A DNA stretch of 63,797 nucleotides, the filler included, from Octopus bimaculoides (taxonomy: Eukaryota), in assembly GCF_001194135.2 (NCBI RefSeq). It is 11 parts of 11 records of this genome, joined end to end, with 100 filler letters (N's around TTAATTAATTAA, not from the genome) between each part and the next. Parts side by side here need not be neighbours in the genome. Positions count along the whole stretch, not along the records: positions 53,386 to 56,102 come from NC_068988.1; 10 more parts are not named here. One strand, 5' to 3'. This document shows, in pieces, positions 53,286 through 54,773 of the stretch (positions are counted from its first letter, which is position 1; each line of letters begins with the position of its first letter). The notes beneath the pieces were generated by a model. The model ran no database searches. It had not been told where the DNA came from and saw nothing but the letters and a program-made list of their open reading frames with translations. Position numbers and translations under genes: made by a program.

Positions 53286-53822
53286 NNNNNNNNNNNNNNN
53301 NNNNNNNNNNNNNNNNNNNNNNNNNNNNNTTAATTAATTAANNNNNNNNNNNNNNNNNNNNNNNNNNNNNNNNNNNNNNNNNNNNTAGAAATAAAGCCAT
53401 TACTGAGACTGGACAATAGCACATGCACGTAAATAGTTTTCGAACTCTTCACACAAGTTTTCTGCACTTCTTGGAGAAAATAGAATTTGCGTGGCTTCCC
53501 TAACACGTTTAACAAAGTATTGTCGCAAAGTCCCAGGACAAAGAGAGAGAAAGTGTGAATGAATGATGGAATGAGAGAAAAAATTGGATGGCGGTAGAAA
53601 TAATAGTCCTAATTTTAGTGATGGAAGATTTTCATCCATTATTTCACCTCTATCTCATGTTCACCTTTGGCAATGAAAAGACGCAAGAAGGATGTCGGAA
53701 GAAAAGATATCACACAAATTTAAAACACCAATGAAATTGGGATAACATATTCGGCATCTTTTATGATGTAATATGTAAAATATAATTGGAGAAAAAATAC
53801 GCTTATATATTGTATAACTTAC

Positions 53823-54773
53823 CGATTTATTTAAACGAACTCCGATACACATCGTCCTGATCAAAAGCATCACGTTCAACGAAGACATAAATATAACGCA
53901 AGCGTGTTGAGAGAATATATTTTGAAATGAAGAATTTATAATTATATAAGTAGCAACACAACATCCAGTAATACTAACGAGTACGATAAATCCCGAAGAC
54001 GACTGAAATGATTCATTTACTAAATTCAGTGTTTTACTAAGAGTATCATGTGAGTTACATATTTCTGCAATCTCTTTATATTTCTTGAAGAAATACGAAG
54101 TATTAGATTGCTTTTCTTTTACGTATCTCTCAGCCTCGCTCGCTACTTTATTAAACTCATGCTGCAGTGCAATCCCAATTGCTATATTGATGTACCAATC
54201 AAATAGCACACACGTAAATGATATAAAATTAAATACAATGGAAATTAACAAAATAATTAAGTCAAGAGTTTTACTGCTGTTTAGATATTTTGTTGAGGGA
54301 TTCCAAAGAGAGTTCACGAGAAACGGGAGAATGTAGTACATAATAATTTGTATAACAGGCGGCATCAATATCGCTATAAAAAGTGATATAAAAGGAAATA
54401 CTAAGTTATTGTTATAGAATTTTTCATCAACTTCTTTAATTGTAAGTTCGGTGAATGCTTCGAGTATTTCTTTGTCTTTAGATTTTCTGAAGAATTTGAT
54501 CAGACAATAGAGTGAAAATAAACAGTGAAGAAATATTACATAAATATATACGATTATTTTATCAGTTTCGCGATGAATATCTTCTCTTAGATCGTAAGCA
54601 TATATAATGGGACTTGTAATCAGATATACCAAATACAGGATATAAAAGGCAGCGATACAGATAGTTTTATATTTGAGAGACTTCAGTGATATGTTCATAA
54701 GTGATATCTTAGACATATTAATTTTTCCATAAAATTGTAATATGTTATAGAATCGTGTTTCTTTTAGTTCCAT
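53823..54773 (-). CDS. Gustatory receptor-like (GRL / 7tm_7-type 7TM ion channel) protein, large coding exon (TM1-TM6)
   Basis: 317 codons of a 370-aa ORF in AT-rich DNA, ending at a canonical phase-0 donor (NKS|gtaagt). About six hydrophobic segments, with a long loop between TM4 and TM5 carrying FDWYINIAIGIALQHEF...HDTLSKTLNLVNESF. Family call by motif recall only. Confidence 0.7.

What the first reader, a model, noticed from the sequence alone, without database searches (positions are those of the whole stretch)
53386..54773. Gustatory-receptor-like 7TM ion channel gene in a cephalopod
Seen: a 317-codon exon with about six TM segments, ending at a phase-0 GTAAGT donor after ...GVRLNKS. It has a short N-terminal ILQFYG element and a long TM4-TM5 loop (LQHEF...HDTLSKTLNLVNESF). 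Beyond it, an open frame at 53386-53515 (GKPRKFYFLQEVQKTCVKSSKTIYVHVLLSSLSNGFIS) runs into the gap and looks like the IL3/TM7a region. Established: insect GR/OR and metazoan GRL proteins have this topology and conserved phase-0 introns near the C-terminus, whereas the known octopus chemotactile receptors are Cys-loop derived. Inference: this is a divergent GRL, a candidate second chemosensory channel class in octopus. The obvious AG acceptor before GKPRK is out of phase with the donor, so the copy may be a pseudogene or have a hidden exon.
Basis: partly seen in the sequence, partly recalled or inferred. Interest (0 to 1): 0.75.

Follow-up and report, generated by a model that had tools for sequence, protein, structure and literature searches.

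The report
Octopus gustatory-receptor-like gene, variable first exon
The piece holds one intact long first exon of a divergent octopus member of the insect-type gustatory receptor (GR-like) ion channel family.

Summary
The 317-codon exon is real. It runs on the minus strand from 54773 to 53823 and ends at a phase-0 GTAAGT donor. It has six hydrophobic helices, and the charge distribution puts the N-terminus inside the cell.

It belongs to the GR/GRL (7TMIC) superfamily:
- An AlphaFold model of the exon (pTM 0.75) matches insect OR, Orco and GR structures best.
- The exon aligns to non-octopus GRLs with 90% probability; the octopus family profile does so with 99.5% (E 2e-23).
- The family profile's distant hits in 1.8 billion proteins include gastropod, cuttlefish, annelid and tardigrade proteins; every one checked passes Pfam 7tm_7.

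The open frame at 53386-53515 is not a TM7 exon. Homologous paralog introns carry stops and frameshifts there, and a TM7-tail HMM finds nothing in the piece.

In O. sinensis, three NCBI isoforms are exactly three different long first exons joined to the same three short phase-0 exons, which end in TYILVVIQT. This is the classic insect Gr28b/Gr39a-type gene structure. The window exon is therefore most likely one variable exon of such an array, with its constant exons outside the piece.

The exon evolves fast (dN/dS about 0.7) but its frame is kept. Expression and chemosensory function are untested. It is a new member of a known kind.

The parts
53823..54773 (-). Long variable first exon, 317 codons from the ATG to ...GVRLNKS. 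It encodes the N-terminal S0 helix and TM1-TM6 of a GR-like 7TM ion channel subunit.
   Evidence: ORF and translation. Chance of staying open 6.5e-12. AF2 model pLDDT 73.7, pTM 0.75. Foldseek best hits are insect OR/Orco/GR structures. hhalign to GRL profiles gives 90-96% probability.
54597..54665 (-). TM1 (residues 37-59).
   Evidence: Hydropathy; helix 35-68 in the model.
54492..54560 (-). TM2 (residues 72-94).
   Evidence: Hydropathy; helix 70-95 in the model.
54318..54398 (-). TM3 (residues 126-152).
   Evidence: Hydropathy; helix 128-153 in the model.
54165..54272 (-). TM4 (residues 168-203), a long helix that continues into the cytoplasmic loop.
   Evidence: Hydropathy; helix 168-221 in the model; the hhalign match to GRLs starts here.
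54000..54164 (-). Long intracellular TM4-TM5 loop (residues 204-258), with the family-conserved EFNKxAxEAxRY...ICNxHDxLSxxLxLVNES motif.
   Evidence: 8 K+R in this loop; invariant columns in the family alignment; aligned to the corresponding GRL region.
53931..53999 (-). TM5 (residues 259-281), including the family-invariant C..ATY motif.
53838..53903 (-). TM6 (residues 291-312).
53817..53822 (-). GTAAGT splice donor, phase 0, directly after ...LNKS.
   Evidence: All 11 paralogous first exons examined in O. sinensis and O. vulgaris end at the same position: ten ...LN[KRTE]S and one ...LHKS, ten with GTAAGT and one with GTGAGT. In L001 this donor is joined to constant exon C1 in three NCBI isoforms.
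53386..53816 (-). First 431 nt of the intron downstream of the variable exon.
   Evidence: It aligns along its length to the introns behind O. vulgaris paralog exons at 77-82% identity, with indels not divisible by three. The homologous frames carry stops or frameshifts. A TM7-tail HMM finds no hit in the piece even at E<=10.
54774..54835 (-). Proximal upstream region with a TATA-like element (TTATATAG, 54811-54818, 38-45 nt before the ATG) and a CAACGxGTTTAACTCT block (54818-54833). This is a putative own promoter of the variable exon; that is inference only.
   Evidence: Conserved among the closest paralog units, weaker in distant ones, with no consistent AG acceptor before the ATG. No transcript data.

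Best explanation
The piece contains one intact 'variable' long first exon of an octopus GR-like (GRL, 7TMIC superfamily) gene cluster. The exon encodes the N-terminal S0 helix and TM1-TM6. In insect ORs and GRs (my own knowledge of the published structures) these helices form the ligand-binding pocket and part of the cytoplasmic anchor.

The missing C-terminus consists of the post-TM6 segment, TM7a and the pore-lining TM7b with its TYxxxxxQ motif. It is most likely supplied by three short constant exons, separated by phase-0 introns, that lie kilobases downstream and outside this piece. These would be shared by a tandem array of similar first exons, each probably with its own promoter. The result would be a set of channel subunits with different ligand-facing halves and an identical pore and anchor end. 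By analogy with insect GRs and ORs they would assemble into tetrameric ligand-gated cation channels.

Shown here: the exon, its donor and phase, its topology, its fold, its homology to GRLs, the array-plus-constant-exon structure in three O. sinensis loci, and selection for an open frame.

Inferred: that the window's own exon is spliced to such constant exons, that it is expressed, that the protein forms a channel, and that it senses chemicals.
For: Family membership:
1. The AF2 model of the window exon (pLDDT 73.7, pTM 0.75) matches AgamOR28 (TMq 0.64), AaegOR10 (0.65), Orco (0.57) and Gr43a (0.50), all at probability 1.0. ABC-transporter membrane domains score TM about 0.2.
2. For the full-length paralog P0005, the top 16 PDB matches are all insect OR/Orco/GR structures. 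The next hits fall to TM < 0.25, and a GPCR scores 0.14.
3. hhalign of the window exon against non-octopus GRLs (Haliotis, Lottia, Sepia, an annelid, a tardigrade) gives 90% probability, E 1.6e-6, over residues 164-316. With the octopus 606-type proteins (O. sinensis LOC118764606 and its O. bimaculoides relative) added it gives 95.9%, E 5.9e-9. The family profile against the same set gives 99.5%, E 2.3e-23, across TM4-TM7.
4. The family profile has only 34 hits at E<=1e-3 in 1.84 billion representatives. Of the 17 distant ones scanned, 11 were checked one by one and all pass Pfam 7tm_7 above its gathering score. Several are named gustatory receptor by their source. Paralogs P0008 (30.3 bits) and P0021 (31.7 bits) pass the 7tm_7 gathering score of 26.6.
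5. K+R counts are 23 on the predicted inside and 3 on the outside, which indicates an N-terminus-in topology.

Gene structure:
6. L001 (O. sinensis) has at least 6 tandem first exons and a single set of three constant exons: C1 46673-46741, C2 47649-47738 and C3 49533-49589. All have AG/GT sites and all introns are phase 0.
7. The first exons starting at 10001, 16398 and 27570 (called V below), each joined to C1-C3, reproduce NCBI isoforms X1, X2 and X3 exactly.
8. LOC118764606 has the same plan, with two first exons. O. vulgaris L002 has at least 7 window-like first exons and no constant exon in 68 kb.
9. This is the structure described for insect GR genes: tandem long first exons spliced into three shared short final exons, with three ancestral phase-0 introns (PMC6175461; criteria in PMC5203786).

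Intactness:
10. Against the closest paralogs, indels in the exon are only multiples of three, while the flanks carry many that are not. Only 0.36% of neutral simulations keep the frame open.
Against: - The window exon alone gets no Pfam hit and no PDB sequence hit. The sequence link to GRs rests on profiles and on paralogs.
- The constant exons of the window's own cluster were not seen. The piece ends 437 nt after the donor, and the homologous O. vulgaris stretch (L002) holds none.
- NCBI isoform models are predictions, and I could not inspect the RNA evidence behind them.
- dN/dS of 0.68-0.74 and exon nucleotide identity (82%) close to intron identity (77-82%) show weak constraint. The arrays also contain fragments and a copy with a stop, so some copies are dying.
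- The AF2 alignment had only 12 sequences, and the full-length model is of low confidence (pLDDT 60).
- There are no expression or functional data.
Confidence: 0.78

Rival explanations
1. The exon is a dead or dying copy: an orphaned variable exon that is no longer spliced or expressed, in a birth-and-death array.
For: dN/dS is 0.68-0.74 against the closest paralogs. Exon and intron diverge at nearly the same rate. The O. vulgaris array contains truncated copies (39538-39967, 46449-47054, 58077-58801) and one with an in-frame stop. No protein identical to this ORF is on record.
Against: The exon keeps 317 open codons, the ATG, the consensus donor at the family position and all 27 family-invariant residues. 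Its indels are all in frame, and neutral simulation keeps the ORF open in only 0.36% of runs.
Confidence: 0.12
2. One reading: a stand-alone gene whose own TM7 exon or exons lie directly downstream, with the GKPRK frame or a hidden exon in the adjoining gap.
For: The frame 53386-53515 is open to the piece's edge. The sequence beyond 53386 is not available.
Against: Homologous paralog introns have stops and frameshifts in that frame. It has no resemblance to GRL tails: the HMM finds no hit in the piece at E<=10, while the true C1-C3 exons score 4e-5 to 3e-14. None of the 5-14 kb intervals between paralogous first exons in L001 or L002 contains TM7 exons.
Confidence: 0.05
3. It is a genuine GRL subunit whose role is not external chemosensation. 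Examples of such roles are developmental patterning, internal nutrient sensing, and light or heat sensing, as reported for some GR/GRL proteins.
For: Non-chemosensory roles are documented for GRLs and GRs: body patterning for a cnidarian GRL (Saina et al. 2015, as cited in PMC5850775) and light and heat for Gr28b (PMC6175461). No tissue expression data are available here.
Against: Tandem expansion, rapid divergence (dN/dS about 0.7) and birth-and-death turnover are typical of environmental chemoreceptor repertoires rather than of conserved developmental genes. This is an inference.
Confidence: 0.25
4. It belongs to another membrane protein family (a GPCR, an ABC-transporter membrane domain or something else), and the GR resemblance is superficial.
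For: The exon has no Pfam hit. ABC-transporter domains appear in the Foldseek list.
Against: Those matches have TM-scores of 0.14-0.28 and low probability, against 0.5-0.65 at probability 1.0 for OR/GR structures. The sequence profiles connect only to 7tm_7 proteins. The topology is N-in.
Confidence: 0.01

Closest known systems
Insect GR genes with alternatively spliced long first exons (Drosophila Gr28b/Gr39a/Gr23a; Blattella Gr60a-m)
   Same: Both have tandem long first exons encoding TM1-TM6, each spliced into three shared short final exons through phase-0 introns, with the last exon carrying the TM7 motif (PMC6175461). The fold is the same.
   Different: Sequence identity to insect proteins is only about 10-14%. 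The TM7 motif is TYILVVIQT, with T in place of the final F. The octopus introns are kilobases long. Splicing of the window exon itself was not observed.
Mollusc and other lophotrochozoan GRLs (Lottia V4C6X0 'Gustatory receptor'; Haliotis 'gustatory receptor for sugar taste 64a/61a-like'; Sepia pharaonis CAE1281263)
   Same: These are the nearest non-octopus relatives by profile search (E 3e-11 to 2e-4). They share the EF...H..L motif in the TM4-TM5 loop, the FxNRLT...GxSV.G segment and TY.....Q in TM7.
   Different: The window-type exons are far more divergent, and the window exon and most close paralogs scanned get no 7tm_7 hit on their own. They form an octopus-restricted tandem expansion.
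Octopus LOC118764606 / O. bimaculoides A0A0L8FL56 (UniProt automatic name 'Gustatory receptor')
   Same: It is on the same chromosome as the 608 array in O. sinensis, about 250 kb away. It has the same variable/constant exon plan and the same TY..VV.QTK tail.
   Different: It has only two first exons, is more conserved and is recognised by Pfam 7tm_7 (31.7 bits). The 607/608 and window-type arrays are expanded and are annotated only as 'uncharacterized'.
Octopus chemotactile receptors (CRs)
   Same: Both are lineage-expanded, fast-evolving putative ionotropic receptors of octopus. The CRs are described in PMC11526382.
   Different: The CRs are pentameric Cys-loop (nicotinic-receptor-derived) channels, an unrelated fold and gene structure. 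Their sensory role is demonstrated, whereas that of the GRLs is not.
Clustered protocadherin / UGT1A variable-constant loci of vertebrates
   Same: They share the formal gene architecture: an array of variable first exons, each spliced to shared constant exons (my own knowledge).
   Different: The proteins are unrelated. Promoter choice per cell is established there and is only a speculation here.

Membership tests
GR/GRL family (insect chemoreceptor superfamily, 7TMIC; Pfam 7tm_7) | Seven TM helices with an intracellular N-terminus, the inverse of a GPCR (criterion 1 of Robertson 2015 as listed in PMC5203786). | tested here: met
   The exon has six TM helices. K+R counts are 23 in the predicted inside loops and 3 outside. 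The seventh helix is on the constant exons of paralogs and is not in this piece. No dedicated topology predictor was available.
GR/GRL family (insect chemoreceptor superfamily, 7TMIC; Pfam 7tm_7) | [quoted passage not shown] | tested here: met
   The first of the three is present in the window: a phase-0 GTAAGT after TM6 at the same position as in all 11 paralogs. All three are verified in O. sinensis L001 as V|C1|C2|C3, all phase 0, with the last 8 residues before TY. The second and third cannot be seen for the window itself.
GR/GRL family (insect chemoreceptor superfamily, 7TMIC; Pfam 7tm_7) | 7tm_7 signature or significant homology to recognised GRs/GRLs (criterion 3). | tested here: met
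   The window exon alone has no Pfam hit, but it lacks the TM7 region that dominates the model. hhalign of the exon against non-octopus GRLs gives 90%, E 1.6e-6. The family profile gives 99.5%, E 2.3e-23. Paralogs P0008 and P0021 exceed the gathering score. The 11 distant profile hits that were checked singly all pass 7tm_7.
GR/GRL family (insect chemoreceptor superfamily, 7TMIC; Pfam 7tm_7) | TYhhhhhQF motif at the end of TM7 (criterion 4; often divergent). | not testable with these tools
   TM7 is not in the piece. In paralogs the shared last exon reads MIGSFITYILVVIQTK, so TY and Q are kept and F is replaced by T. Sepia has TYVVVVIQT.
GR/GRL family (insect chemoreceptor superfamily, 7TMIC; Pfam 7tm_7) | OR/GR fold: S0 helix, long S4-S5 helices running into a cytoplasmic anchor, and best structural match to OR/GR structures. 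| tested here: met
   The window-exon model has helices 7-26, 35-68, 70-95, 128-153, 168-221, 228-279 and 287-316. Its Foldseek best hits are OR/Orco/GR structures at TMq 0.5-0.65 and probability 1.0. For the full-length paralog the top 16 hits are all OR/Orco/GR.
GR/GRL family (insect chemoreceptor superfamily, 7TMIC; Pfam 7tm_7) | Tetrameric ligand-gated cation channel activity. | not testable with these tools
   This needs expression, electrophysiology and a structure.
Alternatively spliced GR locus (variable long first exons plus shared final exons) | Several tandem first exons joined to one set of C-terminal exons in transcripts. | tested here: inconclusive
   Shown at the level of gene models for O. 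sinensis LOC118764608: X1, X2 and X3 are three V exons plus the same C1-C3. The same genomic layout holds for 606. For the window's own cluster, only the array of first exons (O. vulgaris L002) and the conserved donor are seen. No transcripts were available.

The most novel reading that the evidence does not exclude
Octopuses carry a lineage-specific, rapidly diversifying repertoire of GR-like ion channel subunits, built from arrays of variable first exons on shared pore-encoding exons. This repertoire would serve as a second ionotropic chemoreceptor system alongside the Cys-loop chemotactile receptors, possibly with one variable exon chosen per sensory cell. It would extend the insect-type variable/constant GR gene structure to molluscs. 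No paper found here describes it for cephalopods.
Probability: 0.3. Interest if true: 0.7.

Novelty: new member of a known kind. Interest (0 to 1): 0.45.

Why it matters
Octopus contact chemosensation is currently explained by the nicotinic-receptor-derived chemotactile receptors. I found no paper in the searchable library that links GR-like genes to octopus or other cephalopods, and most of these loci are annotated as 'uncharacterized'.

If the arrays are expressed in sensory tissue, they would be a second candidate receptor family. They would also be a clear non-arthropod example of the GR 'many first exons, one shared pore end' design, which suggests that this design is ancient or recurrent.

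Practically, the result warns annotators in two ways. Single first exons of this family look like truncated genes or pseudogenes when seen in isolation. Gene models in these arrays are also error-prone; the chimeric O. vulgaris model P0004 is an example.

Tried and rejected
- Pfam on the exon, on the read-through ORF and on the GKPRK frame gave no hits.
- PDB sequence searches with P0001 and with the family profile gave none.
- The exact-sequence look-ups of the window ORF, P0005 and P0006 found nothing on record. The source species of the window and the O. bimaculoides locus therefore could not be fixed. The nearest DNA is the O. vulgaris array, at 77-83% identity including flanks.
- The word-index protein searches returned only octopus sequences, so the AF2 alignments were shallow (12 rows).
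- In one search I translated the paralog introns in the wrong frame. This was corrected.
- dN/dS values involving L2_19978 are unreliable, because that copy has a stop and probably a frameshift.
- Rfam found nothing in the piece.
- Four look-ups of three octopus chemotactile-receptor papers failed because they are not held. The 7TMIC preprint does not mention molluscs.
- I rejected the GPCR and ABC-transporter readings (TM-scores <= 0.28). I also rejected the GKPRK frame as an exon.

Full report
**What is in the sequence.** On the minus strand, an ATG at 54773 opens 317 codons that end ...MCIGVRLNKS at 53823. They are followed directly by GTAAGT, so the donor is phase 0. The piece is about 70% A+T, and the chance of 317 stop-free codons in this composition is 6.5e-12. 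Hydropathy gives six TM segments (37-59, 72-94, 126-152, 168-203, 259-281, 291-312) and a 55-residue loop between TM4 and TM5. Lys+Arg counts are 23 in the loops predicted to be inside (N-terminus, TM2-3, TM4-5, post-TM6) and 3 in the others. This indicates an intracellular N-terminus.

**What family it is: sequence evidence.**
- The exon alone has no Pfam hit.
- Its only close relatives are octopus proteins annotated 'uncharacterized'.
- Two of these, P0008 (30.3 bits) and P0021 (31.7 bits), pass the Pfam 7tm_7 gathering score of 26.6. P0005 comes close at 25.1 bits.
- A profile of the family finds only 34 proteins at E<=1e-3 among 1.84 billion representatives.
- The non-trivial hits include Haliotis, Lottia, Littorina, Nucella, Batillaria, Sepia, an annelid and a tardigrade. 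Of the 17 distant ones scanned, 11 were checked one by one and all pass 7tm_7, most also Trehalose_recp.
- Several of these are named gustatory receptor by their source.
- The family profile against a profile of non-octopus GRLs gives 99.5% probability, E 2.3e-23, from TM4 to TM7.
- The window exon on its own gives 90% (E 1.6e-6) over residues 164-316, and 95.9% when the octopus 606-type proteins (O. sinensis LOC118764606 and its O. bimaculoides relative) are included.

**What family it is: structural evidence.**
- The AF2 model of the window exon (pLDDT 73.7, pTM 0.75) has an N-terminal helix, three TM helices, two very long helices (168-221 and 228-279) and a sixth helix.
- Its best PDB matches are AgamOR28, AaegOR10, Orco and Gr43a, with TMq 0.50-0.65 and probability 1.0. 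Everything else, mainly ABC-transporter domains, has a TM-score of about 0.2.
- The full-length paralog P0005 gives a weaker model (pLDDT 60). Its top 16 matches are nevertheless exclusively insect OR, Orco and GR structures.
- A GPCR or another fold is excluded.

**Where TM7 is.** Complete paralogs end ...LNRS | VHSITQSIHYMQFQGVDQEVVAK | ILVFLNRLTTESHGIDVGGCFVITPSSTLT | MIGSFITYILVVIQTKPL.

In the O. sinensis locus L001, tblastn shows at least six tandem ~950-nt first exons (starting at 1457, 10001, 16398, 27570, 42321 and 59371, plus a fragment at 6109). It shows only one set of three short exons: C1 46673-46741, C2 47649-47738 and C3 49533-49589. All have good AG/GT sites and all introns are phase 0. 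Below, V(n) means the first exon that starts at position n of L001.

V(10001)+C1-C3, V(16398)+C1-C3 and V(27570)+C1-C3 reproduce NCBI isoforms X1, X2 and X3 of LOC118764608 exactly. LOC118764606 lies about 250 kb away on the same chromosome and has two long first exons and three short shared exons.

This matches the structure Robertson and colleagues describe for insect GR genes. [quoted passage not shown] All 11 paralogous first exons I checked end at the same phase-0 donor position as the window: ten ...LN[KRTE]S and one ...LHKS, ten with GTAAGT and one with GTGAGT.

The frame at 53386-53515 is open, but only for 43 codons and only up to the edge of the piece. The whole 437-nt stretch behind the donor aligns to the introns behind O. 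vulgaris paralog exons. In the four closest paralog units, the homologous frame has stops, a 30-nt deletion or frameshifts. An HMM of GRL tails (octopus, Sepia, Haliotis) finds C1, C2 and C3 of L001 at E 4e-5 to 3e-14. It finds nothing in the piece, and nothing credible in the 68-kb O. vulgaris array. So the stretch is intron.

**Is the exon alive?** The nearest sequences available are three first exons of the O. vulgaris array L002: 66% amino-acid identity and 82% nucleotide identity, with flanks at 72-82%. dN/dS is 0.68-0.74, so constraint is weak or selection is diversifying, as is usual for chemoreceptor arrays.

The exon still differs from those paralogs only by in-frame indels (none; 9; 3+9), while the flanks have many indels not divisible by three. 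Only 0.36% of neutral simulations with half of the observed substitutions keep the frame open. All 27 columns invariant in the family alignment are kept. I conclude that coding capacity is under selection. The arrays do contain dead copies, both fragments and a copy with a stop, so a residual pseudogene probability of about 0.1 remains.

**Mechanism (inferred).** By analogy with insect OR and GR structures, from my own knowledge of the published cryo-EM work, the variable exon would supply the ligand pocket helices. The shared exons would supply TM7a (anchor) and TM7b (pore). Isoforms would then differ in tuning but share the pore and the assembly interface. A TATA-like element 38-45 nt before the ATG, conserved among close paralog units, hints at one promoter per variable exon. 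This is untested.

**Comparison and novelty.** GRLs are known in molluscs (Robertson 2015, as cited in PMC7746228 and PMC5850775). One conserved octopus GRL already carries the automatic UniProt name 'Gustatory receptor' (A0A0L8FL56). I found no paper in the searchable library that links GRLs or 7TMICs to cephalopods. Reviews of octopus chemosensation discuss only the Cys-loop chemotactile receptors (PMC11526382).

The window exon is thus a new, divergent member of a known family, in a known type of gene structure. The expansion in octopus and its possible sensory role are the interesting but unproven parts.

**Limits.**
- The source species is not identified.
- The constant exons of the window's own cluster were not seen.
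- There are no transcript data.
- The alignments used for structure prediction were shallow.

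Noticed in passing
window 55358-55480 and 56010-56102: Compound microsatellites: (TA)44(AG)18 and (CA)31(AT)16. Homology of the piece to the O. vulgaris paralog units stops at about 55400-55435, at the first microsatellite. It therefore marks the upstream end of the duplicated unit. 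The ORFs listed there are low-complexity artefacts.
   Followed up: partly
window 54811-54833 (minus strand, 38-60 nt before the ATG): A TATA-like TTATATAG next to a CAACGxGTTTAACTCT block, conserved in the closest paralog units and weaker in distant ones. This is a possible per-exon promoter.
   Followed up: partly
L002 (O. vulgaris OX597821.1), 10001-58380: The annotated protein P0004 looks like a chimeric gene model. It has a ~150-residue N-terminal part with no resemblance to this family, fused to the middle of one GRL first exon and the start of another. The array also holds truncated first exons (39538-39967, 46449-47054, 58077-58801) and one with an in-frame stop (19978-20931).
   Followed up: partly
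L001 46673-46741 and isoforms P0008/P0010/P0005/P0006: The first constant exon is used in two ways. Some isoform models include VHSITRSIHYMQFQ before DIKPEVVAK, and others skip it. The longer form matches the conserved IHD...Y.MNFKG segment of LOC118764606.
   Followed up: no
L003 23267-24277 (O. sinensis CM016866.1): LOC118764606 has a second long first exon, 43% identical to the annotated one. It lies upstream of the same three short exons, and no separate isoform appeared among the proteins retrieved.
   Followed up: no
Constant exon C3 of octopus loci; Sepia pharaonis CAE1281263: The cephalopod GRL tails seen here read TY..VV.QTK, with Thr where the canonical TYhhhhhQF motif has Phe. The gastropod relatives keep QF.
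   Followed up: no
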